This document shows, in pieces, positions 1 to 17,100 of a stretch of DNA of 64,000 nt (its first letter is position 1; each line of letters opens with the position of its first letter). Source of the DNA: Macrostomum hystrix (Eukaryota; Animalia; Platyhelminthes); assembly GCA_950097015.1 (NCBI GenBank), contig CATNEN010000025.1, forward strand, positions 7,068,001-7,132,000. The letters run 5' to 3'. The position numbers and the translations under genes are program-made. The notes under the pieces were generated by a model, which did no database searches, was not told where the DNA came from, and saw only the letters and a list, made by a program, of their open reading frames with translations.

Positions 1-177
1 GCCTTCCATATTGCCAGTCTTCAGCGCCTCCTGAAAAATGGCCTTACCCTCGGCGCTACTGAACGCAATACAGTTGCTAGGCAACGGACGCCGATAAAAT
101 TGACTTGGCGAAGACGAAGATGGAGGCGGCCGGTCCCGCTGCAGCAGGTGCAGCATGGAGTTGGACTTGCGGTCCAT
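1..177 (-). CDS. PCS: Phytochelatin synthase (glutathione gamma-glutamylcysteinyltransferase), 5' end; gene continues off the left edge
   Basis: Manual translation from ATG at 177: MDRKSNSMLHLLQRDRPPPSSSSPSQFYRRPLPSNCIAFSSAEGKAIFQEALKTGNMEG. This matches the conserved PCS N-terminus (plant PCS1 type YRRxLP...FSSAEGKxIFxEAL..G.MEG). An acceptor (ttttccag) lies 13 nt upstream of the ATG. The catalytic Cys/His/Asp residues are outside the window. Confidence 0.88.
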   Translation of the reverse strand, partial: MDRKSNSMLHLLQRDRPPPSSSSPSQFYRRPLPSNCIAFSSAEGKAIFQEALKTGNMEG

Positions 178-520
178 TCAATTGCGCAGGCTGGAAAATA
201 ATGACGATATTACCCTTATCAGACTACCGACAACTAAACAGTAGTAACAAAGACGGCAACAAAAAACGCAAAAAAAGAAAAAAATACATGTTTTTATCTT
301 TCAGCATTGAGTTTTTTATGTATTGTATTTTTTAATCAAGCAAAATTAAACATTGATATAAATGTGATTTTGCGTGTGCTCTGTATAGAAAGAAAATTTC
401 TAACCAAATCGGAAACATTGAAGCCCTCCAGTCGGTACTCTATAGTAAATCACAATGTCATTTTACAAAATTAAATGCACATTGCACTACTAATAGTAGA
501 TTGGTTAGATTGCACAGTCA

Positions 521-3500
521 TCAATCCGCTGATGGCATGCAGCGCAGACGCTTAAAAGCGGCCTCCTCAAGCTTCTGCCGATGATCCGGGTGGGCCACGT
601 TGATGAGGTGATAGGCCCGCTGGCGTAGGTTCCTGCCCCACAGGTGGGCAACGCCGTGCTCAGTTACTACGTAGTGAACGTGGGCTCGGGTTGTAACTAC
701 GCCAGCGCCTAGAGGATGCGAAACGAGGCAAAAGAGAGGCTTAATGTAATATAATATCTAGGATAATATCCTTAACAACTTAGGCATCCAGAAGAATTTT
801 GGGATCTTTTCTGTGGTTTTGGAACACGGAAATCCCAACCTAAAGATCTGGGAAGATAGGAATTCCAACGTGAGGATCAGGGAAGATGGAAATTCCAACG
901 TGAGGATCTGGGAAGATGGGAATCCCAACCTGGGGATTTGGGAGAATGAAAATCCCAACCTAAGGATCTCGGATGATGGGAATTACAACGTGAGGATGTG
1001 GGCGAAAGGGAATCCCGAAACTGAGGATCTTGGAGAATGGAAATCCCAACCTGAGGATCTTGGAGAAGGGAAATCCCAACCTGAGGATATTGTAGAATGG
1101 AAATCCCAACCTCTGAGGATCCTTGAGAAGGGAAATCCCAACCTGAGGATCTTGGAGAACGGAAATCCCAACCTGAGGATATTGTAGAATGGAAATCCCA
1201 ACCTCTGAGGATCCTTGAGAAGGGAAATCCCAACCTGAGGATATTGGAGAATGGAAATCCCAACCTCTGAGGATCCTTGAGAAGGGAAATCCCAACCTTA
1301 GGATATTGTAGAATGGAAATCCCAACCTCTGAGGATCCTTGAGAAGGGAAATCTAAACCTAAGGATTTGGAGAATGGAAATCCCAAAATGAGGGTTTGAT
1401 GTCTCTCACTAATGAGACAAGTAAAAGCGGTTTAAAGAAACAGGCAGCCAGACTCACCCTCCCGCAGGTATGGCACAATCTTGCTGCTACCCTTTTTAGT
1501 CGCCGACTGCAGAGCGATAATTGGCACGCCGAGGCCGTCGCTGGACAGGGCGGCTCCGCGCATGAAGTCGATTTGGCCGCCAACACCGGAGTAGATGCGC
1601 GGCCCGATGGAATCACTGACTACCTGGCCTGTCAGGTCAATCTCTATGCAGGAATTGATGGCTGTCACTCGCGGATTCTGGCTGATGATTGACACCTGTG
1701 CAAGTTAGGATGGGTGAGGGAGTGAGGCGGCACTGCATCGTTGAAAATTTTTGTGAAGATCCTAGTTCTTTATTTAAAAAAATCCCAAAATCCCACTTTT
1801 ATTCTCGTAGATAATCCCGAAATCTACTTTTATTTCATAGAGATAATCCTGAAATCCACTTCTATTTTGATGGAGATAATCCTGAAATCTACTTTTATTT
1901 TAGTAGATAATCCCGAAATCCCACTTCCATTTTCGTGGAGATAATCCTGAAATCCACTTCTATTTTCGTGGAGATAATCCCGAAATCTACTTTTATTTTA
2001 GTAGATAATCCCGAAATCCCACTTCTATTTTTTTGTGACGATGATTCCGAAATCCCACAATTGAAACTTTGATTCCCATGAAAAAGTGTATTCAAATGAA
2101 GCGTAGTTAAACTAGCGCACCTTATTAACAAACTGAATGTCGCACAGCTCAACCATGGCATTTTCGTCAATAAAGTCGAACACCTTCTTTGTGCCGATAA
2201 CGAAGCCGCTGACAATCTTGCCCGGCCTGATACGCTTCAAAGCGTTGGTGATAGCGCCGCAGGCGGTGAGATCCACCACACCGTCCGAGAACATCTCGGT
2301 GTGAATACCTAGATTCTTGTGACCTCTAAGCGAGGCCAGCACAGCATCGGGAATGCTGCCTATGCCAGTCTGGAGTGTGGCGCCATCCTCAACCAGCTTC
2401 TCGGCTATCAGCTTGCCTATTTGTTGCTCTTGTGGATTAATACGCTTTGGAGGCATTTCGTGCAGCGGCTGTTCCATCTCGACCATGCAGTCGATGTGGG
2501 AACAGTGGATTGCCGAATCACCGCGGGTTCGAGGCAAATTCGGATTTACCTATTTGCGATTATTTTGTTTCGGGTTTAGAATGGAGGAAGTTTCTGATTG
2601 GTTAGGAGTCCAATCATTAGGGATAGATGGAGGACAATAATCTATTATATAAAGGTTTCTGATTGGCTAATTGTCCAACCAATAGGAATTGAAATGAAAT
2701 TAGGAAAAATTTTAAAAAGCTCATTGGCTAGGAGACGAACCAATAGAGTTTCAGATGATAAAGAGGATGTCAACTTAAGGCTCTAGTATGGAGCCCAAGG
2801 TCAATCCTCAAACCAAACCAAGCTGAAATCAGTAGCTATAAGAAACACCGAAAAATCTCACCCATTCCTTCCTATGGTACACTGGAGGATATCTGCAACC
2901 AGCTACTAATTTCAGTCCGTTTCGTTCGAAAATTAACCTCGTGCTCGATTTTAAAGCCTCCAGTTGACACGAAATCACCATTTTATCCCATTTATCCCCC
3001 GAAGGTACCATTGCAAGGATTGGGGTGAGATGTCTCGGCTTTTCGAGTCGTTTCTAGAGCCTTAAGTTGACAAACTTTAGCAGGTCCTAATGCAGCAGAG
3101 AAAAATAATGGACACCTCAGATTGGCTAGGTTAATGAAAGACTTATATCGGATCGTGCATTTGATGATGATACGATTGTTGTTTTTACAAGCCGTTAATT
3201 TCCTACCTGAGCGACAATAAATCGAGCATTCTGTATGGCCGCCCTTGCGCAGTCAACAGACGGTCCCAGACTGCAGAAGCCGTGCTTATCTGGCGGAGTG
3301 ACCATGATTAGAGCCAAGTCTAGCTTCACAGCGCCGCGCCGAAATAGCAGCGGAATCTCCGACAGAAATATTGGCGTAAAATCGCCGCGACCTTTGTCAA
3401 TAGCCTCGCGACAATTGGCCGATGTGAACAAAGAATTGCTGCGAAATACGCCTTGGCAAGCTTCGGCATTGTATGCAGCCGGACCCTCGGTGTGAATGTG

Positions 3501-3788
3501 CATCACGCTAACATTCTTCAGTTTGCGATTCATGCCAACTTTAACCATACTGTCTATTAGGTGATTAGGCGTAGCCGCTCCGCCGTGCACAAACACCTTC
3601 TGATTGGAGTCCAGGTGCTTCTCAAACACTTTGTCAGCCTCAATTTTAATTGGCAGCTTATCCGGTATGGGATGAAACGGTTCACCCTGAGCCTGAGCAT
3701 CAACATAATAGGCGCGTAGGAGAGCTCGGCCAGGATTTCTAGCCAGTTGGCCGGCAAGACAGCGAGACGCGAACAATGACGACAGCAT
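521..3788 (-). CDS. Acetyl-CoA hydrolase/transferase family protein (mitochondrial acetate:succinate CoA-transferase-like), 4 exons, ~478 aa
   Basis: Exons 3788-3207, 2549-2121, 1695-1458, 708-521; all GT-AG and phase-consistent (0,0,1). Motifs VFVHGGAATP, GIGSIPDAV, GIHTEMFSDG (catalytic Glu region), GQIDFMRGA, VVTTRAHVHYVVTEHG. The Arg/Ser/Leu-rich N-terminus looks like a mitochondrial presequence. Confidence 0.93.
822..1386. repeat. Minisatellite, ~30-bp unit (GGGAAATCCCAACCTGAGGATCTTGGAGAA), ASCT intron 3
   Basis: Tandem copies visible directly. Confidence 0.9.
1790..2050. repeat. Minisatellite, ~32-33-bp unit (GAGATAATCCTGAAATCCACTTCTATTTT...), ASCT intron 2
   Basis: Tandem degenerate copies. 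Confidence 0.85.
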
Positions 3789-3863
3789 GTGTGACTCTTG
3801 TATATATATATATATATTTATATATCCGTCCTATCTCTACCGTGGTATTTACAAAGCTAATAT

Positions 3864-3897
3864 CACAGATTCTATATTAGGTAATATAGAATCTGTG
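3864..3897. mobile_element. 34-bp collapsed MITE / transposon remnant
   Basis: Perfect 16-bp inverted repeat CACAGATTCTATATTA-gg-TAATATAGAATCTGTG, flanked by an exact 8-bp direct repeat GCTAATAT (3856-3863 and 3898-3905). Confidence 0.7.
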
Positions 3898-4596
3898 GCT
3901 AATATAGCTAATAAACACAGGATATCGTCTATGGTTCGAAGTGCTCTATAATTTGTACTTTTAATGCTAGAAGACCACATACTATACTAACTATAGGTAC
4001 TAAATAGTTAATTTTGTATCTGTGAGCCAGATTGATCGAGTCAAAAGTGAAACAGAGGCATAGACTACTCGAAGATAAATACAGATAAAATAAAGTATAC
4101 ACTTTTTCTATTACCTTCTGAACTGAATCAAAAAAGTGCTAATTTCAATTTATTGCGACTCGAATGTCTCAGACAGATTTATTGAGACTATAAAAAATAT
4201 TTTAGATAAGATATATATTACTAGTCCATTTTATTCAATTAATAGCAGCCTATAACAGAGAAGCTAGTAGATTATTATTGATAGGTTTAAACAAAAACTG
4301 CAAACTAAGTAAAATACTATTTATTCACTTAAACATAACCTTGGACTTTCAAATCCAATCAGAAGCAAAAAGCGGTGCTTTTAAACAAAAAATATGGATA
4401 GTTGTATAAAAATTGTATTAAGTAAAAATTTGTGTTTCGACTTAAAAAAAAGACTAGAGATCTTAAGGGATACTGCTGCCGTAAGGGAATAAGCTTTGAT
4501 TTAAGCGATAACAATAGTGTTTGCTATAAGTTCACTAAAGGATGAAGTCATAAAACAACACCAAAAATTCGTATAGTCGTACAGATGATCTTACAA

Positions 4597-7500
4597 TTAC
4601 TTCAGTCCATACTGCTCGATAAGTCGCTTAGCTAGCTCAACATACTGAACGCGGGCCTGCCCCTGATCAACACCTTTGTGCTGATTCCAGCTGTCCCATT
4701 TGGCCTTGCCTTTTGGGTCCAGTATGCCAGGCCTATCAATGTTGACATCACCGATTGTGGCCTGTTTGAAAAGGCTGTACAGTTCTAGCAGCTCTGAGTC
4801 TGTGGGACGGGACTTCAGATTCTTTATCTTTCCAGCATAGTCGTTGAATTCAGCCTAAGGTGACAAAAGAGTGAAATTCTTATACCTTCAGAAATTCCAC
4901 TAGACTAAACGGTCTACTGACAAAATTAGCATGGACGGTTTTCACACAATGCTAGGAAATTTAAGATTATTAGGTGAGGTGAGTCAGAAAGTGGTTTGCT
5001 TTTATTATTATTATTATTATTATAGCTAACTTAAGCAACTATGATAACTTATGTTTTTGTATTAGGAGAAAAGCTATGAATATTAAGCAATCTGATTAGA
5101 CACACAACAACACAAGCTTCAAAAACACACACTTCCACAAATTTGCTCAAATATTTGTAACTAGATGTATACAAGTAAACTAAAATAAAACCATTGTCAA
5201 TTTTCATTGTCAATGTGGGACATTGGCATAACTAGCCTTGTAAAAAAATCAGTGAAACCAAAATTGGGGTAAACAGTGTATTGGCTTGGTTGATTTAGGC
5301 ATATTAAACATAATATGTACTTCAAATCTTTAGTAAAAATGTTTGACATAATTAATATTTTTAGAATCAATATTTAGTAGGTGCTAGTCATTTTGTCAAC
5401 TGCCATTTTGTCAAATAGGTTGACAAAGTGACCAAGATGTATTTGTTGTAATTCTGACCATTCCAAATTACTACTGTATGTGCTACATCTTTGGGGCAGT
5501 ATAACTCCACAATTGCCTGGTCCTAAGCCCATAATGAGCAAGGAGGAGGGTATTGCTAAAAATTACAAGTACTTAAGGGACTGATTAGTACTTAAGACAA
5601 CGATTTATTCCATTAGTTATTTCATCTGTCCCATCCATACACTTATATATAGATGTGTAAATCGTGACCGTGATCCTAAATTGTGACATGTAAATCACAA
5701 GATAGATTGTGTGATGTATGCATACATGTACACTTATGCAAGACAAAATTTGGCAGATTGTATCCTACTTAACTCTCATTGGATTGGCTACCTAAGACAA
5801 TTACCTTTGTATAGCTTCTGCGTGAATTTGTGTGCTAAGGGCATAGTTGAAAAAGTGACCCATTCTATGGGTCTCCCATTAGGCTAGTTGACAAAGTGAC
5901 AAACTATCAAAGTCATTTTATAAAACCCTAGTTGACAAAGAGGCAGTTGACAAAATGACTAGGATCATCTTTAAGATGTATGATGAATTAATGAAATTTT
6001 AACAACAAATATATTGTATACAATATTAAAAGAGCAGTATATCACATTTTAAAACAATTTTCCATTGTTATTTCTTTTAGACACACAGGCATAACTGGCC
6101 TATCAGCGAAGCCATAGTCCGGATCATGTCATTCATACATGCACAACCTCCCAAATCTTAGCCAGCCTTGCAACTTAGTTTTTGCTCTCATTTGTGACTT
6201 AGTTCGTTTCATTGCTCTATTTACGACTTAGTTTGCTCTCATTTGCTCTCTTTTTCTCTCCCCTTTTTACTTTTCTTCACGCCTTCCTTTTTTGTCCCTT
6301 GGTCCCCCCTTTGATTTTTTTGCACTTGGTCAATTGGTTTTTGCGACTTACCTTGCTTGGCCCTCGTTTCACCCGGCCGGTTCGGCGGGGTCAGCAGGGT
6401 GTTGCGCATGTATGATGTCGTTTACGCCGGAGATCTCCGGCGTAAATCTAGTTTGGGATCGGAGACAGGCGTAATGCTTAGCGTAAGTATAGGCCAAAAT
6501 GTGCCTTGGCGTAAGTGCTTGGCATAAATACATGGCATAAATCAAGTGGCGTAAATGTTGGCACAAATGAGATCATTCACGATCAAATGTATCACTATAG
6601 AACATTTCACATTTGCGTTAATTATGATGTTAAAGAGCAGCATTAAAAACAAAGTTCATTCAAATATTGCAGTTTTTATATATGAGATAGCAGAATATAT
6701 AGTGTAGGAAAGCAAACGTTTTTTTAGCTTCAAGATGCTTACTTTGATTATTTATTCAGAATTTGCAACTTGTGAGATTTTTAAACAGTTGCAACTTCTG
6801 AATTTAAATCACCGATTAATTGTGAATCATCTATTCTATTCATCTATTGTTTAAGTAGAGGGCAGCAAGCAAGGAGGCCAATAAAAAGACATGGATTAAC
6901 AAGAATTGTGAGGGACCTTTTTTGGGTGGCGTAAGTCAGAGGGACCTTTTTTGGTTGGCGTAAGTCTGGCATAAGTGCCAAAAAATCTTGGATTTTTTCT
7001 CCGGCGTAAGTCCAGCATGATCCGGACTATGGCAGCGAAGCTATGGTCAGCTTCTTTTTTAATTAGTGAATGTTGGCATAGACTTTTTAAAGCTCAATTT
7101 TACTTTACGTGTAACCTAATGTTTCCCTAATGTTTCTCTGGATCCTAGACACTTTGTCATCTTACAACTTTGTCATCCACTTGGAAGGTAGGACACTTGG
7201 TCATCCAGCCAATCAGCATGCTTTAAAGTTAGGCCTAGGTCAGTTCGTCATCTACTAGGGCCTAATAACAAGCAATCTAGTTTGTCATCAATAAAGTGAG
7301 GGTGGGGTGGTGGGGCAGAGGTGTGAACACACTTCACACTCTAAATTGTCAAAAAGAGGTGTCGAAACTGATTTCATTATAAGAGTTGAAAGATAGGTGC
7401 CAACACGATGTGAGGAGGGGTGGGGAGGGGTGGTTCGGTTCTAACTTTTAAACCTTTGTTTTATAGATGACAAAGTGTCCACAAGTCTAAGTCTCTTCGT

Positions 7501-7847
7501 CATCCATCCTCTGAGATATTGGACAGATCATCATCTGGATGACGAAGTTGTAAGATGACGAAGTGTCCAGGTACCTGTTTCCCCCTCCCCAAGAAAAAGC
7601 AGGATCTGCCACTATGCTCACCTGACTCTTCCTGGCTATTATGTTATAAAAACTCTAAATATATACAAATAAAACGATCTAGATAGACGGTAGCATTTAA
7701 AACATAAAAAACTGTGAACATAAGGCTAAGCAAAAGCAATAACTATAGTCTTAAAAGCAAAAACAATAAATATATAATAGGCTAAAAGGCTACAGTTCCT
7801 TTGCCCAACAAGGCTGCGACATAGCCTTTGCTTACCTCAGTCGTCAT
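4597..7847 (-). CDS. ACBP: Acyl-CoA-binding protein (ACBP/DBI), 2 exons, 89 aa
   Basis: Exon 1 is 7847-7836 (MTTE|GTAAG). Exon 2 is 4854-4597: AEFNDYAGKIKNLKSRPTDSELLELYSLFKQATIGDVNIDRPGILDPKGKAKWDSWNQHKGVDQGQARVQYVELAKRLIEQYGLK*. It has the diagnostic LYxxFKQATxGD and KGKAKWDxW motifs, and the tiny first coding exon is typical of ACBP genes. The exon 1 assignment is less certain than exon 2. Confidence 0.92.
5380..5967. mobile_element. MITE (older copy) in the ACBP intron
   Basis: 21-bp perfect inverted repeat CTAGTCATTTTGTCAACTGCC (5384-5404) / GGCAGTTGACAAAATGACTAG (5942-5962), with repeated internal TTGACAAA motifs. No clean TSD. Confidence 0.6.
6112..7032. mobile_element. Non-autonomous DNA transposon (921 bp) with 17-bp TIRs and an 8-bp TSD
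   Basis: TIR CCATAGTCCGGATCATG (6112-6128) / CATGATCCGGACTATGG (7016-7032). TSD CAGCGAAG at 6104-6111 and 7033-7040. Many internal GGCGTAAG/GGCATAA motifs and a perfect 26-bp palindrome at 6421-6446. No transposase ORF. Confidence 0.85.
7140..7575. mobile_element. MITE with ~40-bp imperfect TIRs
   Basis: GGATCCTAGACACTTTGTCATCTTACAACTTTGTCATCCA at 7140 pairs with TGGATGACGAAGTTGTAAGATGACGAAGTGTCCAGGTACC ending at 7575. Candidate 9-bp TSD tgtttctct / tgtttcccc (7/9 match). Confidence 0.75.
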
Positions 7848-9501
7848 TTTAGCTGTCTAGTCTCAGTTTTTACTTGTTGTACAACGCGACAAACTGTAAG
7901 TTAGCAATTCTCGCTTTTTTCCCAATTGTTAAAAAACGGATTCTTAGAAAGTTCTAACACAATTTGCATATGAACTCTTATTTTACTCACAGGGTTAACA
8001 ATTTCAACAATTTAACAAAAAACTTTTTTTCTTTTGCTACAATGGACTTGAACTTGCGTTTCTTAGTTTTGACAAGAACAATACAACTTTTTAAACTCCT
8101 ATTTGCAGTTCAAAGTAAGAGGAATAAATAAAAACGACTAAGCTGTTCGCGGAAAAGTTTTGTATTGATTTATTGAATCAAGTGACTTATCTTGATATTT
8201 AAAGCATTATAATTTCTAATGCTTGATTTTTTTGTGGACCCGGGGTGTTCCTATAAACGCTGATGTGTGAACCAGTGGCCTACCGTGTCGTGTAGCTCTA
8301 TTTTAATTTGACAAAGACAGGAGTTGAATTTGACGTGTATACACCAATAGTATTGGCCGGTGAACAGAATTTCGTAGTTCCGTAGCTCATTTGTATCGCA
8401 TAAGTAGAATTCTAAGACAGATAGCGGAAAGTATTCTAACCAAAATTTTCGAGACAAACAAAAACGATTATACGTGACACAATGTATTTACTTATCCAAG
8501 GTTCGATAATTCGAACTGTATTTGAACTGTATTGGGTGTGGAATTGCAAAATGCGTACCTAAATTTATAAAGAAATTTCGATTCGATCGCATGGCTACCA
8601 GCTTGAAAATGATTATTTAAGGAGGACAATTACCACTTTTGCCTTTCTCCATCTATGCACAAATCTGCACAATAATCGACTGTTGGAAAATACTGCTTCA
8701 TTTGAAATTTTAAGACAGAAAATTTTCATAAAGCATGAAATTCGATCTCATTGACGTCAAACTCGCAGCGCAATGGTTTGATGGACTGTTCTCATGATGG
8801 GCAGCCTTAGCAGTTGTCACACTGGGTGCGGTGTATCGGTTTACAATGCTGCTGAAAGAAATTGCCGGATTTAATCCATCAAGGATACTTGTTATTTTCT
8901 CAGGCGAAAAATTTAACGAACAAAGGAAACTTTGTGCCCAAGCCATCCACAAAGTTTTCAGCTCAATGTTTAAGTAGAAAACAAGAGGTAACCGTGTCGC
9001 TGACAAAACCCTGTTTCAGAAGTCTAAGGACTAGCCACGCCTAAAACCTACCGACCACACCCACCTTTCATTGTCAGAGAATTCGGGTCCCTGTTATCCC
9101 AAAATTTTCCCTCGGTACTTTTTATCCGTTTTTGTCGATGGTCATTACCAATTGACTACACAATTTCTGGTAGTTTATCGTACAATGGCCTTCTACTCGT
9201 ATAGTTAGCATCCTATAGACGCAAAGCCATAGAAGTCCATATATAATCTTACTTATCTTACCATTGAGGTATAATAATATGATATGTTTCAAAAGCTGTT
9301 TTACTTTCAAGGCGTTATCTCACGGGCCAGCACAATGGACTATGCAAATATAGAAGTGAAATACAAAAGTAATATTGTAATATTCGTGTGTCCCCGTTGA
9401 AAATTAACCTTTAATGCTAAGTCTTGAAAAGTGATCAGAATCTCATAGAGGGCCATTTGACGTCGTATCTTCAGCGAGGTAACACACTTCTGCTGAGAAA
9501 T

Positions 9502-10200
9502 CTCCTATTCACCACCTTCCATGTCCTATTCCTCATCTTCCATCTCCTATTCACCACCTTCCATGTCCTATTCCTCATCTTCCATCTCCTATTCACCACC
9601 TTCCATGTCCTATTCCTCATCTTCCATCTCCTATTCACCACCTTCCATGTCCTATTCCTCATCTTCCATCTCCTATTCACCACCTTCCATGTCCTATTCC
9701 TCATCTTCCATCTCCTATTCACCACCTTCCATGTCCTATTCCTCATCTTCCATCTCCTATTCACCACCTTCCATCTCCTATTCACCACCTTCCATGTCCT
9801 ATTTCTCATCTTCCATCTCCTATTCACCACCTTCCATGTTCTATTCCTCATCTTCCATCTCCTATTCACCACCTTCCATGTCCTATTCACCACCTTCCAT
9901 CTCCTATTCACCACCTTCCATGTCCTATTCCTCATCTTCCATCTCCTATTCACCACCTTCCATGTCCTATTCACCACCTTCCATGTCCTATTTCTCATCT
10001 TCCATCTCCTATTCACCACCTTCCATGTCCTATTCACCACCTTCCATCTCCTATTCACCACCTTCCATCTCCTATTCACCACCTTCCATCTCCTATTCAC
10101 CACCTTCCATCTCCTATTCCTCATCTTCCATCTCCTATTCCTCATCTTCCATGTCCTATTCACCATCTTCCATCTCCTATTCACCATCTTCCATCTCCTA
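9502..10200. repeat. Pyrimidine-rich minisatellite, 21-bp unit in two alternating variants
   Basis: TCCTATTCACCACCTTCCATG / TCCTATTCCTCATCTTCCATC. Confidence 0.93.
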
Positions 10201-10430
10201 TTTCTCAACTTCCGTCTCCTTTTGCTCGCCCTACATTCCATATTAGCTCGTAGTATTTCTTTCCCTAGCAACAAGAAATCTCAGCAAGACAACAGCCAAT
10301 CGTGTTCCATCTAAAGAGAGATTTACGATGAAATATAAAAGGCAAATGGACGCGGACTTGAAACTGCAAGATCGGTAACAGCCTCTTAAATCTCCGGACA
10401 CTGCAAGCAGCACAATCAAGGACCCGCTGG

Positions 10431-12618
10431 ATGGACTACAATCTGGGATTCGATCTGGCCAAGACAATCGGCCAGACAATCGGCTGCCTGCTCAACCTGG
10501 TGTTCATCGGCTTCACCTTCCGCGAACAGATCGGCAACCGGGCCTGCGCCGTCCTGTTCCGCTGCCAGTCGGTCATTGACCTGTCGGTGATGGTGTCCAG
10601 CCTGCTGCTGGTCCAATACCGCAGGAGAATCATCGCGTCACCGCCGCAGGGCGTCGGCGGCTCCAACGATGTCGCCTGGATTCTGTTCTGCTCCGTGGTA
10701 TTCAGCCAGCTGATCTATTGGATGCTTGTGAGCATGAGCGTGTACAACCTGGTGGCTCTCTCCATCGAGCGCTGCCTGTGCCTGTGCGCCCCCCTGTGGT
10801 ATAAGCTTCACAAACGCGTTGTGCTGCGATGGCTCATTGTGCTAGTAATTGCTTCGGCATTCTTTGTGCAGGCGAGTTTTTTGCACTTTTAACTTGACAA
10901 TTTGATAAGCTGTAATGTACGATCAATGCTCCATGCTTGGCGATATTCTTGAAGATACTCTTAGTTAACCAAGCTGTAAAATGTGTTCCAGTATCAACAA
11001 AGTACAGGTGTACACGCACACACAGGTGTGTACATCTGTCCTGACTATAGCGCTTCAAGTTTTGGTCTCTGTTTTGGTATTTCCTATATGTAGTCTAGCG
11101 GTTTGTGGCAGTCTAGATGGCTTGAAGGCTATAACTACTAACGACTATCGTTCTCAGTATCACGGCTGGCGGTTGCGATCTCTTCCGGGTCCTTACCTCG
11201 GGATCAGATCAAGAAAGAACACAAACGCAGTTAGTTTTCTAATTGTCTAACTTAACGGAGCTCAAAGCTAATTCTCTACCGAGCTCGCGGCGGTCCATTT
11301 TTCCGCGCTCCGCTCCGACTTAAATAATGTCTTTGAAACCCCTCGATCCGAGGGGAAGGCAATACCGTAGCAACATTCGTACTGTTCATTATCCCCTTCC
11401 CCTTCATCGATGCAGTCTTCTGGTGCGGTCCCGGCCTCCTCCAGAGCTCGTTCCCGATCGGGTCCGGGTGGCTCCAGTTTCAGGCTGGGCTGGGTCGATG
11501 CAGGCAGCTGCGGGTCGGGACAGGCCGGGTTGATTCCGGCAGCTCCACGTCAGCACAGCTGCGAGTCGGTTTCAGGTGGCTCAACGTCAGCACCGCTGCT
11601 GTCATGCCGGACCGGGTTTGCGCTGAAATGATTAAGTGGACTCGGGGCGAATCTTTTTCTAATCTTTCTTCTTTCAGTTGTTTGCCCTCTCTGCTGTTGA
11701 TCCTCTGCTAGTTTCCTCCTAGCGCTCTCTTGAATTCCCTTCAGATTTCTAAGTCTTATACTGACTTTCTCATCGTCAGGCAGTGTACATTTCACTGTGC
11801 ATTGGAGGTAGGCTTTCAAGGGCGCAGTCCTTCTCTCCGCAGCTGCGCCCCCAATTTAAATTGGCCTCGCCGAGGAATCGAGCTCAGGAACATTGGTGCG
11901 GGTGGCCCCGAGGTTTAATGAAGCAAAGGCACACAGACTCAGATGAGCACGACCTGAAATTCCGCAGATACCATTTTGCCTGATGTTTTCGCCACTATCG
12001 GAGCGCCTGCAGGAGAATCGCAAAGCAGCCAGCAGCAATGCAACTAACGACAGCGAGACATTGCTAACTATCGTCCGCTACTGCGACTGGAACCATTTCA
12101 CCGCGGCAGAGCTGACAGCATTCGGCATCGCCAACGTGGTGCTGTTCTGGATCGTGCCATTCCTGCTGTTCATCGTGACCTACTCGGCCATCATCATAGT
12201 CCTGGCCAGATCCACCAGCGGCGTCGGCAATTCGGCTGATCGGCAGAAGAAGTCGGCCAGCGCCGCTGCCAAACGGCTGACGGTCACATCCGGCGTCACC
12301 TGCTTCGCCTTCGTGGCACTGTTCGCTCTGGACTCGGTCACATTCGTGATGGACAGCCTGGCCGACTCGTCTGTTGGCAATACGTTCCTGCAGCTGCTGG
12401 ATTCATTTCTGATTAGCATGAACAGTGCTGTGAACCCCGTCATCTTCCTGATCTTCATGCCTAACTTCCGGGCCTTCTGCTTCCACTGCTGCGGCCTGCG
12501 CGGCGGCGGCGCCAGCGGCGGCAGACAGTCGGGAATGAGCAGCGGTGTCGTCAGCAATGCCGGTGGCGGCGCCAGCGGCGGCATGGCGTTGTCCAACGTG
12601 AAAGCAATCAAGAACTGA
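10431..12618 (+). CDS. Orphan rhodopsin-class (class A-like) 7TM GPCR, 2 exons, ~363 aa
   Basis: Exon 10431-10871 carries TM1-TM4 (GCLLN, QSVIDL, LSIERC as the DRY equivalent). Exon 11968-12618 carries TM5 (FWIVPFLLF), TM6, and TM7 (NSAVNPVIF plus helix 8 NFR). The phase-0 join AFFVQ|IPFCLMF restores the TM4 proline. The N-terminus is very short, so the start is uncertain. Confidence 0.85.
11010..11905 (-). mobile_element. tRNA-derived SINE family A copy, split by a 714-bp insertion
   Basis: The body fragment ending ...CATCTGTCCTGACT (11046) resumes at CTGACTTTCTCATCG (11761) and runs on to the tRNA-like head (GGAATCGAGCTC). It is homologous to the copies at 15.5, 33.5 and 34.6 kb. Confidence 0.75.
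11047..11760 (-). pseudogene. Decayed coding-like insert (possible retroelement N-terminal fragment)
   Basis: Bounded by a CTGACT direct repeat. One minus frame reads through in-frame stops and includes YECCYGIAFPSDRGFQRHY, which resembles a degenerate C2H2 finger. Confidence 0.3.
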
Positions 12619-13559: not shown

Positions 13560-14005
13560 TAGTCAATCAGAGACTTTGGCGGATTGGAGAGTTTTCAGTT
13601 GATAAAACTAGCCAATCAGAGAGACTTTGGCGGAGTGGAGAGTTTTCAGTTGATCAAACTAGCCAATCAGAGAGACTTTGGCGGATTGGAGAGTTTTCAG
13701 TTGATAAAACTAGCCAATCAGAGAGACTTTGGCGGAGTGGAGAGTTTTCAGTTGATAAAACTAGCCAATCAGAGAGACTTTGGCGGAGTGGAGAGTTTTC
13801 AGTTGATAAAACTAGCCAATCAGAGAAATTTTGGCGGAGTGGAGAGTTTTAAGTTGATAAAACTAGCCAATCAGAGAGACTTTGGCGGAGTGGAGAGTTT
13901 TCAGTTGATAAAACTAGCCAATCAGAGAGACTTTGGCGGAGTGGAGAGTTTTAAGTTGATAAAACTAGCCAATCAGAGAGACTTTGGCGGAGTGGAGAGT
14001 TTTTA
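13560..14005. repeat. Minisatellite, 51-bp unit containing a CCAAT box (copy 1)
   Basis: GAGAGACTTTGGCGGAGTGGAGAGTTTTCAGTTGATAAAACTAGCCAATCA, ~9 copies. Confidence 0.93.
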
Positions 14006-14113
14006 GTATTCATTAAATTAACAATAGTTTTTCAGTTAATGAAACAAGCGTAGAAAACGATATAGTCGCGTCTCCCAAAAAGCTCCACGAGCTGACCAGA
14101 CAGAAAATTGAGT

Positions 14114-17100
14114 TCAGACCGGGATTGGCTTGTTCCTGCGACCTTTATCCTCTTCGGACAACTCCTGTTCCTCTTCGGCCTCCGGATCGCGAACCAGAAT
14201 CCGTTCGTCGTCCTCACCTCCGCCTAACTTGTTCTCAAGCAGCCTGAGCTGGTAGGACTCGCAGGCGCCAGTCTTGGCCCACACTGCCAGGTGCTCGCAG
14301 TTGTTCTTAGTTAAACTGTACTGCGACTCGTCTAGGCGGCTGAGAGCCCGCTCGACAACCGTCTCCGGGGTGTAGCAGTCAAGGTTGTAGTAGTCCACTC
14401 GGTAGAGACTCGCCTGCTTATTCGAGAAGAGCCGACTGCGCCGCTGGACAGAGGCGAGGCCGCCGCCACCTCCGAATAGGCGCTCGCCTAGGCGAAGCTT
14501 AATATCGTATTCGACTGTCTCGAATGTCTCGGCGCCGACCTCGACTACGATGGCGTGATGGTAGTAGCCAATTTTGCGCCAGAATGCCACCTGACTACCG
14601 ACAATCAACTCGTCGATGTCGTAAACCTGCGAGAGCAATTACGAGTAATGGTGACTTATGTGAAATTAATGGTGACTTATTTACATTTTCAGCCAATCGA
14701 AGAAAAGTAACCGGTTTTCGGAAAAATTTTTAAACAATCTCAGCCAATCAGAGAGACTTTGGCGGACTGGAGAGTTTCAGTTGATATAACTAGCCAATCA
14801 GAGAGATTTTGGAGGAGTGGAGAGTTTTCAGTTGATAAAACTAGCCAATCAGAGAGATTTTGGCGGAGTGGAGAGTTTTCAGTTGATAAAACTAGCCAAT
14901 CAGAGAGATTTTGGAGGACTGGAGAGTTTTCAGTTGATAAAACTAGCCAATCGGAGAGATTTTGGCGGAGTGGAGAGTTTTCAGTTGATAAAACTAGCCA
15001 ATCAGAGAGATTTTGGCGGAGTGGAGAGTTTTCAGTTGATAAAACTAGCCAATCGGAGAGATTTTGGCGGAGTGGAGAGTTTTCAGTTGATAAAACTAGC
15101 CAATCAGAGAGATTTTCGCGGTGTGGAGAGTTTTCAGTTGATAAAACTAGCCAATCGGAGAGATTTTGGCGGAGTGGAGAGTTTTCAGTTGATAAAACTA
15201 GCCAATCAGAGAGACTTTGGCGGAGTGGAGAGTTTTCAGTTGATAAAACTAGCCAATCAGAGAGATTTTGGCGGACTGGAGAGTTTTCAGTTGATAAGTC
15301 TATCAAGTATTTCGGCGGTATTTCAAGTACCCACGTTTTTCATTTTTCGTTAAATCTTCCAAAATATTAAACCAATCGCCATGAAATTCCAGCACACGAG
15401 CTAAAGATTTTCACTCTATCCGATAATCCGATGATTATCTGGGTTCTGTGCTTCTGGGTTTTCATTTTTATAGTCAACTTGGTGGCTAAGTGTCTACCGA
15501 GGATATTGTGCATCATAGGGCTGCGAGCAGTGGCACATCATTTAGTGACAGTAAACCCGCAGCCAGCGAGGAGGCAATTCTGCCCATTTCGCTGACTCCT
15601 GAGCGCACACGCACACACAGGTGTGTACATCTGTCTTGACGTAAATTGTACGACGAACCCGCAAGCCTTTTCTCCGCGGCTGCACTCCAAACAAATGTGG
15701 CCTCGCCGCGGAATCGAGCTCAGGGACCTTGGTAAACACGTTAATGGCTCTGCCACTCACCCCCCGATATGGTGCATTATGAAACAGTACAAGCTGCAGC
15801 CAGGTCTCACCTTGACCATCTGATAGGGCCGGATGGAACTTCCACTCGACGCGTGACCCTTGAACAGGTCACGCAGGCCGGAAACAGTGGTGGGCACCTC
15901 CGGCTCCCAGCCGAGTCTGCTGGACAGGCTCATCACCGCCTGGCAACGCTCGCATTTCAACGTGTCCTCGTCGTCCTCGGTTGCAGTCGACGCCGGCAAT
16001 GTCGGCTGGCCCGGCCCCACCGGGTGCAGGCAGGCAAATTCGGCCCGGCAAGAGTCGCATCGGAGCAGCTCAGCGGCTAGTCGGCGCCTCTTCGCGGCAT
16101 TGGATGAGTCGACGTCGACAGCGTCACCCAACTTATCGGGCTCCTTCTTTCCAAGGCTTCTGTCATCGACTTGCGCCACTGCTGTGTGCCGCTGCTGCTC
16201 GTCAATTTTCTGCTTGCCTGGCTCCGGCGGAAGCAGCGGTGGTAGCGGCTGTGGTGCTGGCTGTGGTGCTGGCTGTGGCGCTGGCTGCGAATGCATTCGG
16301 GCCAGCAGGGGCACTGTGGGTGGTGTGCCACAGGGCGGCTGAAACGGCACAAAAAAGCAAAGTGAAAAAACTGATTTTCTGGACTCCTTAAAACAGAAGA
16401 AGATAAGATAAGAAAGTCTTGAACTCACGGAGAAGTGCTCAAAGCCGTAGGTTGGAGACGGCGGCGGCGGTGCCGATGGCTCAGGCGAGGTGGCGTCGGG
16501 CGGCGGTGGAGCCGACGCGAAGCTGAATGCCGGGCAGCTCGGAGCTGGCGTCGATGGCTGAAGTAAAAGAAGTGATTGATTGGTAGCCGATCGGTTCCGA
16601 AATGAGAGAGTGAAAAGCTCTACTTGAATTAAAAATTACCACTATGTGTTTCAAAGCCGTCGTAGCCGGAATGCCAGGCTTAACACAGCGCACAATGGCA
16701 ATTTTAGGCTGCTGCTGCTGCTGCTGCTGCTGCCGATTAGGCAGCTGAGAGGTTGCAGCGAACGCCCCAGCAGGTGCGTAGACTCGGCAGCCAGATGCTG
16801 GCTGACCTAGCTGAGACTGGTTTGTCAGCTGAGGAAGGCAGAATAATTATGTCAAATGCTAGTATTTTTCCTAATTTTTATCCAACTGAAAAGCACAATT
16901 CCCCAACACTCACTCTGACAGATAAGCCTGGCTGTTGCTGCTGTTGCTGCTGTTGCTGCTGTTGCTGCTGTTGCTGCTGTTGCTGCTGCAGTCGGCCTCT
17001 CACAACAAATGCGCCAGCCGGTAGTACTGAGTTTGAGGGCTGAAAATTATCAGTAAACTACTATGTAGAGGATTTCTAATAATTTCCGCGATGCAACTAT

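What the first reader, a model, noticed from the sequence alone, without database searches (positions are those of the whole stretch)
1..7847. Candidate trans-spliced eukaryotic operon: ACBP > acetate:succinate CoA-transferase > phytochelatin synthase
Seen: three co-oriented minus-strand genes, with only ~340 bp between the ASCT stop (521) and the PCS ATG (177), and ~810 bp between the ACBP stop (4597) and the ASCT ATG (3788). Other intergenic gaps in the window are several kb. Read in the sense direction, the ASCT-PCS spacer has ATTAAA (331-336), then a long U-rich tract (~257-285), then an acceptor ttttccag 13 nt before the ATG, with little room for a promoter or an upstream exon. ASCT also has an AG 8 nt before its ATG. 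Established: this poly(A) signal / U-rich / acceptor layout is how spliced-leader trans-splicing resolves polycistronic transcripts in nematodes, and flatworms also have SL trans-splicing and operon-like clusters. Inference: a co-transcribed acyl-CoA / anaerobic acetate / metal-thiol stress module.
Basis: partly seen in the sequence, partly recalled or inferred. Interest (0 to 1): 0.75.

Follow-up and report, generated by a model that had tools for sequence, protein, structure and literature searches.

The report
Flatworm spliced-leader operon candidate, conserved trio
Three neighbouring genes of the flatworm Macrostomum hystrix (an acyl-CoA-binding protein, a mitochondrial CoA-transferase and phytochelatin synthase) lie in the same order in M. 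lignano, and at least the last two look like a spliced-leader operon, a gene arrangement already described for about 15% of M. lignano genes.

Summary
The window is Macrostomum hystrix (220,453,370 bp in 42 contigs). It carries three co-oriented minus-strand genes: ACBP, then an ASCT-1B / 4-hydroxybutyrate-CoA-transferase-like enzyme, then phytochelatin synthase (PCS). The gaps are 808 and 343 nt.

- The genome holds canonical SL RNA genes.
- The trio is syntenic in two M. lignano scaffolds.
- Both annotated M. lignano PCS proteins begin two bases after the homologous acceptor, the mark of an SL-trimmed mRNA end.
- So ASCT>PCS meets the published Macrostomum operon rule, although no M. hystrix RNA was seen.

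ACBP's membership is weaker.
- For it: the ACBP>ASCT pair is kept in a second, older paralogous locus in both species, where both genes show SL-type starts. One M. lignano gene model has the length expected if ACBP exon 1 were spliced to ASCT exon 2.
- Against it: ASCT here has only a poor acceptor after a (TA)n run.

The "functional module" idea is untested. SL operons are known in this genus, and the scan has flagged similar clusters elsewhere in this genome. This is a new member of a known kind.

The parts
7836..7847 (-). Candidate ACBP exon 1: ATG + 3 codons, phase 0, followed by the donor GTAAG at 7835-7831. If the operon reading holds, this is the likely head of the cluster.
   Evidence: The M. 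lignano orthologue has the same kind of 3-codon first exon (ATG TCT GAG|gtaagc; protein P0001 starts MSES). Non-coding sequence around it does not align between the species.
4597..4854 (-). ACBP exon 2 (85 codons + TAA) after the acceptor ccttAG (4856-4855). The exon has no ATG of its own. An SL ending in AUG would also be in frame here.
   Evidence: PF00887, E 2.4e-26. 76% identical to M. lignano ACBP P0001.
3789..4596 (-). ACBP-ASCT spacer, 808 nt. AATAAA at 4325-4320, 4235-4230, 4183-4178 and 4154-4149. A perfect 16+16-nt palindrome at 3897-3864. A (TA)8 run at 3816-3801. Weak AG acceptors at 3798-3795.
   Evidence: The only [T/C]TNCAG match is at 4303-4298, far from the ATG.
521..3788 (-). 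ASCT-1B / 4-hydroxybutyrate-CoA-transferase-like gene. Exons 3788-3207, 2549-2121, 1695-1458 and 708-524, plus stop 523-521. The N-terminus looks like a mitochondrial presequence. Two introns carry minisatellites.
   Evidence: PF02550 + PF13336. TIGR03948-like. Best solved relatives are 4-hydroxybutyrate CoA-transferases, E 4.5e-38. Exons are 81-94% identical to M. lignano.
331..336 (-). ATTAAA, the likely poly(A) signal of ASCT, 185 nt after its stop.
   Evidence: Only A[AT]TAAA in the spacer. M. lignano has AATAAA at the corresponding place in its spacer, followed by a T-rich run.
236..285 (-). U-rich tract downstream of the poly(A) signal.
   Evidence: M. lignano has a comparable T-rich run after its AATAAA.
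191..198 (-). Predicted SL trans-splice acceptor ttttccAG. The SL would be joined to base 190, 13 nt before the PCS ATG.
   Evidence: Only [T/C]TNCAG match in the spacer. The homologous M. lignano acceptor cattttcAG is exactly where the annotated PCS mRNA/CDS begins in two scaffolds.
1..177 (-). Phytochelatin synthase, first 59 codons of exon 1. The gene continues about 2.5 kb beyond the window start.
   Evidence: PF05023. Exon 1 runs to L001:1267. 91-96% identical to M. lignano PCS P0088 over the catalytic domain.

Best explanation
This is an ordinary Macrostomum spliced-leader (SL) operon-type cluster.

Core claim (confidence 0.6): RNA polymerase II reads through the ASCT poly(A) site (ATTAAA at 336-331 plus the U-rich tract). 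The PCS mRNA is then released and capped when the 35-nt SL is trans-spliced to the acceptor ttttccAG at 192-191, 13 nt before the PCS ATG.

Extension (about 0.4): ACBP is the head gene, with its promoter between 7847 and the divergent GPCR, and some or all ASCT transcription starts there. All three genes would then share one primary transcript.

Shown:
- gene identities and spacing;
- SL RNA genes in this genome;
- conserved order in M. lignano;
- M. lignano PCS gene models that start at the homologous acceptor.

Inferred:
- use of the acceptor in M. hystrix;
- co-transcription;
- lack of an internal promoter.
For: 1. Organism and machinery. [quoted passage not shown] The 29-nt core of the M. 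lignano SL occurs 27 times exactly. One copy (locus L005) reads SL-ATG|GTAAG, then a Sm-like AAUAUUUUUAG.

2. Synteny. ACBP>ASCT>PCS is found on M. lignano scaffolds NIVC01001587.1 and NIVC01002291.1, with ASCT-PCS spacers of 475 and 473 bp.

3. PCS start. M. lignano PCS proteins P0164 and P0088 start SYYKPP-MDRKS. They are 5'-partial coding sequences that begin 2 nt after cattttcAG. That annotation cut transcripts at mapped SL sites and called ORFs with TransDecoder, so the annotated mRNA end is the acceptor. The same signature appears at paralogue ASCT2 and at ACBP2 (P0002 starts AEF directly after ctcAG and is named 'partial').

4. Layout. Stop, then 185-225 nt, then A(A/T)TAAA, then a U-rich run, then the Y-tract acceptor 13-20 nt before the ATG is shared by both species, while the rest of the spacer does not align. 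The spacer has one motif match and no GTRAG donor.

5. Published rule. Same strand, less than 1 kb after subtracting repeats, downstream gene trans-spliced; typical intergenic distance about 100 bp. The distance from ATTAAA to the acceptor here is about 140 nt.

6. ACBP link. A second ACBP>ASCT pair exists on M. hystrix contig C11 and in M. lignano L012-L014. In C11, ACBP2 has no ATG after ttttAG (an SL AUG would be in frame), and ASCT2 has gttccAG 8 nt before its ATG.

7. Read-through hint. M. lignano locus L015 carries a gene model running from beyond the locus start, upstream of ACBP exon 2, to the ASCT stop. Its product is 287 aa with only the C-terminal domain. That equals 3 + 284 aa, the size expected for ACBP exon 1 spliced to ASCT exons 2-4.

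8. Repeat-adjusted ACBP-ASCT spacers in M. lignano are about 0.75 kb.
Against: - No RNA from M. hystrix was available, and no transcript contigs of these genes were found in the protein collection.
- A start at an SL site does not distinguish an operon from a monocistronic gene with its own promoter and a short outron. The paper found a unimodal distance distribution for pairs in which a non-trans-spliced gene precedes a trans-spliced one.
- ASCT's acceptor here (acaAG/AG after a (TA)8 run) lacks a pyrimidine tract and the CAG motif. The M. lignano orthologue is no better, and its annotated CDS is complete, so its 5' end is unknown.
- 808 nt and 343 nt can each hold a promoter. TATA-like runs exist in both spacers.
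- An SL AUG joined at base 190 would open a 38-codon out-of-frame ORF overlapping the PCS start; the M. lignano equivalent is at least 57 codons.
- The 287-aa model was matched by length only. Its sequence was not seen.
Confidence: 0.6

Rival explanations
1. Three independent transcription units. PCS is SL trans-spliced, but from its own promoter in the 343-nt spacer or the ASCT 3' end, with an outron of about 100-150 nt. ASCT and ACBP each have their own promoters. The closeness reflects a compact genome and inherited synteny.
For: About 60% of trans-spliced M. lignano genes are not in operons, and distances for pairs in which a non-trans-spliced gene precedes a trans-spliced one are unimodal. 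TATA-like runs lie upstream of both downstream genes. ASCT lacks a good acceptor. Synteny is broadly conserved among the three Macrostomum genomes.
Against: Only about 140 nt separate the ASCT poly(A) signal from the PCS acceptor. The pair meets the published operon rule. The ACBP>ASCT pair is retained in two paralogous loci in two species. One M. lignano model appears to read from ACBP exon 1 into ASCT.
Confidence: 0.27
2. Two-gene operon only. ASCT>PCS are co-transcribed from a promoter in the 808-nt ACBP-ASCT spacer. ACBP is a separate, conventionally cis-spliced gene that merely sits upstream.
For: ASCT has a TATA-like (TA)n/TATAAA run and a perfect palindrome within 110 nt of its ATG, and no canonical acceptor. 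Four AATAAA signals end ACBP well before ASCT. In scaffold NIVC01001587.1, ACBP and ASCT are annotated as separate complete genes.
Against: The conserved, duplicated ACBP>ASCT pairing, with clear SL-type acceptors on both genes of the paralogous pair. The 287-aa read-through model in NIVC01002291.1.
Confidence: 0.25
3. The acceptor at 192-191 is a cis-splice site fed by an upstream non-coding PCS exon, as in the Schistosoma mansoni PCS gene.
For: S. mansoni PCS has a non-coding exon 1 and gave no product with an SL primer. Flatworm acceptors are often shared between cis- and trans-splicing.
Against: There is no GTRAG donor in the 343-nt spacer. Both M. lignano PCS models start at the acceptor, with an open 5'-partial frame and no upstream exon.
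Confidence: 0.05

Closest known systems
SL trans-spliced operons of Macrostomum lignano (Wudarski et al. 2017, PMC5730564; Ustyantsev & Berezikov 2021, PMC8629364), including the orthologous locus on NIVC01001587.1 / NIVC01002291.1
   Same: Same genus and the same 35-nt SL ending in AUG. Same gene order. Same stop / poly(A) signal / U-rich run / YAG acceptor layout. The spacing falls within the published under-1-kb rule.
   Different: A different species, with non-coding sequence that no longer aligns. The spacer is shorter (343 vs about 475 bp). M. hystrix PCS exon 1 lacks the extra intron seen in M. lignano. This trio is not named as an operon in any paper I could read.
Caenorhabditis elegans SL2-type operons
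   Same: A poly(A) signal, a U-rich element and a trans-splice acceptor about 100 nt apart resolve a polycistronic pre-mRNA (established knowledge; also summarised).
   Different: Macrostomum has a single SL and no specialised SL2. Its SL carries a 3' AUG that can supply or interfere with start codons. Spacers are often inflated by minisatellites.
Schistosoma mansoni phytochelatin synthase gene (Ray & Williams 2011, PMC3101182)
   Same: A flatworm PCS with the same catalytic domain.
   Different: SmPCS has a cis-spliced non-coding exon 1, alternative mitochondrial and cytosolic forms, and no evidence of trans-splicing. Here the mRNA appears to begin at an SL acceptor directly behind another gene.
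Conserved trematode operon cytochrome b-c1 subunit 7 > enolase (Op8 in PMC12582326)
   Same: A flatworm gene pair in which the second, metabolic gene is trans-spliced and the pairing is conserved across species.
   Different: Different genes and a different lineage. That study used a stricter 300-bp limit. The CDS-to-CDS gap here (343 nt) exceeds it, although the distance from the poly(A) signal to the acceptor (about 140 nt) is shorter.

Membership tests
Flatworm SL trans-spliced operon (Macrostomum criteria, PMC8629364) | Adjacent genes on the same strand with no opposite-strand gene between them | tested here: met
   ACBP, ASCT and PCS are all on the minus strand and contiguous. The upstream neighbour is a divergent GPCR.
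Flatworm SL trans-spliced operon (Macrostomum criteria, PMC8629364) | Repeat-adjusted intergenic distance below 1 kb | tested here: met
   343 nt and 808 nt, CDS to CDS. The M. lignano orthologues have 473-475 bp and about 0.75 kb after subtracting a 28-bp minisatellite.
Flatworm SL trans-spliced operon (Macrostomum criteria, PMC8629364) | An SL RNA gene with SL, a GT donor and a Sm site is present in the genome | tested here: met
   27 exact copies of the SL core. L005 shows SL-ATG|GTAAG followed by a Sm-like site. SL trans-splicing in M. hystrix is published.
Flatworm SL trans-spliced operon (Macrostomum criteria, PMC8629364) | The downstream gene PCS is SL trans-spliced | tested here: inconclusive
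   No M. hystrix RNA was available. Indirect support: a motif match TTCCAG 13 nt before the ATG, and both M. lignano PCS models start 2 nt after the homologous acceptor.
Flatworm SL trans-spliced operon (Macrostomum criteria, PMC8629364) | The middle gene ASCT is SL trans-spliced | tested here: inconclusive
   Only weak AGs after a (TA)8 run, with no [T/C]TNCAG near the ATG. The paralogue ASCT2 does have an SL-type acceptor in both species.
Flatworm SL trans-spliced operon (Macrostomum criteria, PMC8629364) | A polycistronic precursor exists and there is no internal promoter | not testable with these tools
   The only hint is a 287-aa M. lignano model whose length fits ACBP exon 1 joined to ASCT exons 2-4. 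No TSS or long-read data are held.
Acyl-CoA-binding protein (PF00887) | An ACB domain over the Pfam cut-off | tested here: met
   92.1 bits against a cut-off of 28.3.
ASCT subfamily 1B (Fasciola-type, 4-hydroxybutyrate-CoA-transferase-like) | Acetyl-CoA hydrolase/transferase N- and C-terminal domains, with closest relatives among 4-hydroxybutyrate CoA-transferases | tested here: met
   PF02550 + PF13336. PDB best hits are 4-hydroxybutyrate CoA-transferases, E 4.5e-38. PMC3785491 states that the Fasciola-type ASCT is homologous to these enzymes.
ASCT subfamily 1B (Fasciola-type, 4-hydroxybutyrate-CoA-transferase-like) | Acetate:succinate CoA-transferase activity, and orthology to the F. hepatica enzyme | not tested
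Substrate specificity cannot be read from the family (NCBIfam exon scores are far below the equivalog cut-offs). The mitochondrial presequence was judged by eye only.
Phytochelatin synthase (PF05023) | A PCS domain with the Cys/His/Asp catalytic motifs | tested here: met
   PF05023 at 156.8 + 100.8 bits over two exons. The AYCGL, GDGHFAPIGGY and MDTARFKYP motifs are present in the ORFs. Their assignment to the catalytic triad is from memory of plant PCS1.

The most novel reading that the evidence does not exclude
ACBP>ASCT is an old, functionally coupled operon. An acyl-CoA-binding protein and a mitochondrial CoA-transferase would be kept together because they are co-expressed. The pair was duplicated as a unit before M. 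hystrix and M. lignano split. It was later extended in one copy by PCS and followed in the other by an ADHFE1-like dehydrogenase. That would be a rare case of a metabolically coherent animal operon.
Probability: 0.15. Interest if true: 0.5.

Novelty: new member of a known kind. Interest (0 to 1): 0.3.

Why it matters
The finding adds one well-documented, cross-species-conserved candidate to the list of Macrostomum operons. It also suggests that PCS, a metal-detoxification gene that is conventionally transcribed in Schistosoma, is a trans-spliced downstream gene in this genus. The duplicated ACBP>ASCT pairing offers a small test case for whether flatworm operons ever group functionally related genes. 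None of this changes what is known about SL trans-splicing.

Tried and rejected
- **Rfam** at gathering threshold over the whole window: no match.
- **Word searches** with ACBP exon 2, PCS exon 1 and a Capitella PCS fragment found only M. lignano genome-derived proteins. No Macrostomum transcript contigs appeared, so no SL junction could be read directly.
- **Length limit.** Full-length M. lignano ASCT (472 aa) could not be reached, because no single ASCT exon is long enough for the search's length window. Its locus tag, and therefore its transcriptional-unit name, stayed unknown. Names of the PCS proteins were masked.
- **Supplements** of PMC5816591 hold neither Mlig029997, Mlig011452 nor phytochelatin.
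- **Retrocopies.** Genome search for SL-tail + PCS-exon and SL-tail + ACBP-exon junctions found none.
- **Non-coding alignment** of the spacers and of the ACBP 5' region between the species was not informative; the sequences are too diverged.
- **UniProt A0A1I8ISG4** (P0163, 736 aa) fuses ACBP and ASCT, but it looks like a chimeric gene prediction, including an internally duplicated ASCT stretch. I rejected it as evidence of co-transcription.
- **Joined models left out, as instructed.** I did not search with a joined ASCT or PCS model, and I did not look up the joined 287-aa model by exact sequence.
- **The big representative search** was not used. The proteins are not open questions.
Full report
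**Organism.** The window is G000:C25:7068001-7132000 of an assembly of 220,453,370 bases in 42 contigs. Those are exactly the figures published for Macrostomum hystrix (PMC10468722, Table 1). [quoted passage not shown] Earlier notes of this scan also call the genome a Macrostomum. Nothing here is human.

**The genes.**
- Read on the minus strand, the region holds three genes.
- ACBP has a candidate 4-codon first exon at 7847-7836, followed by GTAAG, and a second exon at 4854-4600 with stop 4599-4597.
- ASCT, a CoA-transferase, has four exons at 3788-3207, 2549-2121, 1695-1458 and 708-524, with stop 523-521.
- Phytochelatin synthase (PCS) has its ATG at 177-175 and runs off the window.
- Exon-by-exon Pfam scans give PF00887, PF02550 + PF13336 and PF05023.
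- The CoA-transferase belongs to the 4-hydroxybutyrate / butyryl-CoA:acetate CoA-transferase branch. The literature equates this branch with the Fasciola-type ASCT subfamily 1B (PMC3785491).
- PCS exon 1 continues to L001:1267, and the catalytic Cys, His and Asp motifs are present.
- The neighbour upstream of ACBP is a divergent plus-strand rhodopsin-type GPCR, so the co-oriented cluster starts at ACBP.

**The spacers.**
- The ASCT-PCS gap is 343 nt.
- It holds one A[AT]TAAA (336-331), a T-rich run (285-236) and one match to the published M. lignano trans-splice acceptor motif [T/C]TNCAG.
- That match is TTCCAG at 196-191, 13 nt before the ATG.
- The gap has no GTRAG donor.
- The ACBP-ASCT gap is 808 nt, with four AATAAA signals between 4325 and 4149.
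- ASCT is preceded only by acaAGAG after a (TA)8 run.

**Machinery.**
- The 35-nt M. lignano SL is given in PMC8629364.
- Its 29-nt core occurs 27 times without mismatch in this genome, partly in arrays with a period of about 11.6 kb.
- One copy shows the SL ending in ATG, a GTAAG donor and a Sm-like site.

**Comparative evidence for PCS.**
- The M. lignano ACBP (P0001, 76% identical) lies on NIVC01001587.1, directly upstream of a 472-aa ASCT and a 386-aa PCS.
- A second scaffold, NIVC01002291.1, has the same ASCT>PCS arrangement.
- The two PCS proteins (P0164, P0088) do not start with Met. They begin SYYKPP and then MDRKS.
- On the DNA, the first codon lies 2 nt after cattttcAG, and the PCS ATG lies 20 nt after that acceptor.
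- The M. lignano annotation trimmed SLs, cut transcriptional units at mapped SL sites and called ORFs with TransDecoder (PMC5730564).
- A 5'-partial ORF that begins at the first in-frame codon after an acceptor therefore means the annotated mRNA starts at that acceptor.
- Two other genes in these loci show the same signature. The paralogous ACBP (P0002, named 'partial') starts AEF directly after ctcAG, so the SL AUG would be in frame.
- The paralogous ASCT has its CDS starting 2 nt after tttcAG.
- Apart from the shared layout (poly(A) signal, U-rich run, acceptor), the M. hystrix and M. lignano spacers do not align.
- I take the acceptor at 192-191 to be a real SL site, with probability of roughly 0.85.

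**Is it an operon?**
- Ustyantsev & Berezikov class a pair as an operon when three conditions hold: the genes are adjacent on one strand, less than 1 kb apart after subtracting repeats, and the downstream gene is trans-spliced. The modal distance is about 100 bp.
- ASCT>PCS meets this rule. The distance from the poly(A) signal to the acceptor is about 140 nt.
- An SL site alone does not exclude a private promoter, and no RNA from M. hystrix could be examined.
- Schistosoma PCS is not trans-spliced and has a non-coding first exon.
- The absence of a donor in the spacer, and M. lignano models that start at the acceptor, argue against that layout here.

**ACBP.**
- Both species carry a second, older ACBP>ASCT pair: on contig C11 in M. 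hystrix and in L012-L014 in M. lignano.
- In the C11 pair, ACBP2 has no ATG after ttttAG, and ASCT2 has gttccAG 8 nt before its ATG.
- The 1,045-bp C11 spacer is about 650 bp minisatellite.
- That pair therefore looks like a standard SL operon, and the pairing predates the split of the two species.
- In the orthologous M. lignano loci, the ACBP-ASCT spacers of 1.9-2.7 kb are mostly a 28-bp minisatellite, leaving about 0.75 kb.
- On NIVC01002291.1, the gene called over ASCT starts beyond the locus edge, upstream of ACBP exon 2. Its product is 287 aa with only the C-terminal domain.
- ASCT exons 2-4 encode 284 aa, and ACBP exon 1 in M. lignano has 3 codons in the same phase.
- The length therefore fits a read-through transcript from the ACBP promoter.
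- Against inclusion of ACBP: ASCT in this window has no convincing acceptor, and it has TATA-like sequence just upstream.

**Caveat on translation.** An SL AUG joined at base 190 opens a 38-codon out-of-frame ORF across the PCS start. The M. lignano equivalent is at least 57 codons. PCS would then depend on leaky scanning. This holds equally for the M. lignano mRNA, so it does not argue against the site.

**Function.** PCS follows only one of the two ACBP>ASCT pairs. The other pair is followed, 3.4 kb away, by an Fe-alcohol-dehydrogenase (ADHFE1-like) gene. The proposed acyl-CoA / acetate / metal-stress module has no support beyond adjacency.

**Verdict.** SL operons cover about 15% of M. lignano genes, and this scan has already judged a similar trio elsewhere in the genome to be ordinary. 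This is a new member of a known kind, of modest interest.

Noticed in passing
G000:C11:3854672-3860030, minus strand (L016 + L017; ACBP2 exon starts at L017:2030, ASCT2 ATG at L017:731): A paralogous ACBP2>ASCT2 pair. ACBP2 has no ATG after its acceptor ttttAG, so the SL AUG would supply Met in frame (M-AEFNDY). ASCT2 has gttccAG 8 nt before its ATG. The 1,045-bp spacer is about 650 bp of minisatellite.
   Followed up: partly
L016:808-3237, minus strand (G000:C11:3848808-3851237): An iron-containing alcohol dehydrogenase gene (PF00465 + PF25137, ADHFE1-like) lies co-oriented 3.4 kb downstream of ASCT2. ADHFE1 acts on 4-hydroxybutyrate, and ASCT2 belongs to the 4-hydroxybutyrate-CoA-transferase branch, so there may be a metabolic link.
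   Followed up: partly
window 3864-3897: A perfect inverted repeat with 16-nt arms and a 2-nt loop, 76-109 nt upstream of the ASCT ATG, followed by a (TA)8 run at 3816-3801. Its role is unknown. It could be a regulatory palindrome or a transposon remnant.
   Followed up: no
window about 800-1400 and 1780-2060; L011:13061-15065; L015:1678-2758 and 5650-8030: Minisatellites fill ASCT introns in M. hystrix. In M. lignano they fill the ACBP-ASCT spacer and ASCT introns, with different copy numbers in the two M. lignano scaffolds. They explain most of the size differences between the loci.
   Followed up: partly
G000 contigs C15, C17, C42 (e.g. C17:2765, 14410, 26055, 37700): SL RNA genes sit in tandem arrays with a period of about 11.6 kb. 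A further 190 or so SL-like matches with 1-3 mismatches are scattered over the genome; they may be variant or decayed SL copies.
   Followed up: no
P0163 (UniProt A0A1I8ISG4, M. lignano): A 736-aa public gene model fuses ACBP with ASCT, includes a duplicated ASCT stretch, and starts with a stretch that resembles the antisense of the neighbouring GPCR. It appears to be a chimeric prediction.
   Followed up: partly
L011:19554-20004 versus L001:1267-1677: M. lignano PCS has an extra intron of about 450 bp splitting what is a single first exon in M. hystrix. This is an intron gain or loss between congeners.
   Followed up: no
window 10431-12618 (+) and 14117-14638 (-): A rhodopsin-type GPCR gene lies divergent from ACBP. 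Further on there is an LRAT-domain (PF04970) ORF, with long minisatellites between them (9424-10314, 13584-14006, 14740-15370).
   Followed up: no
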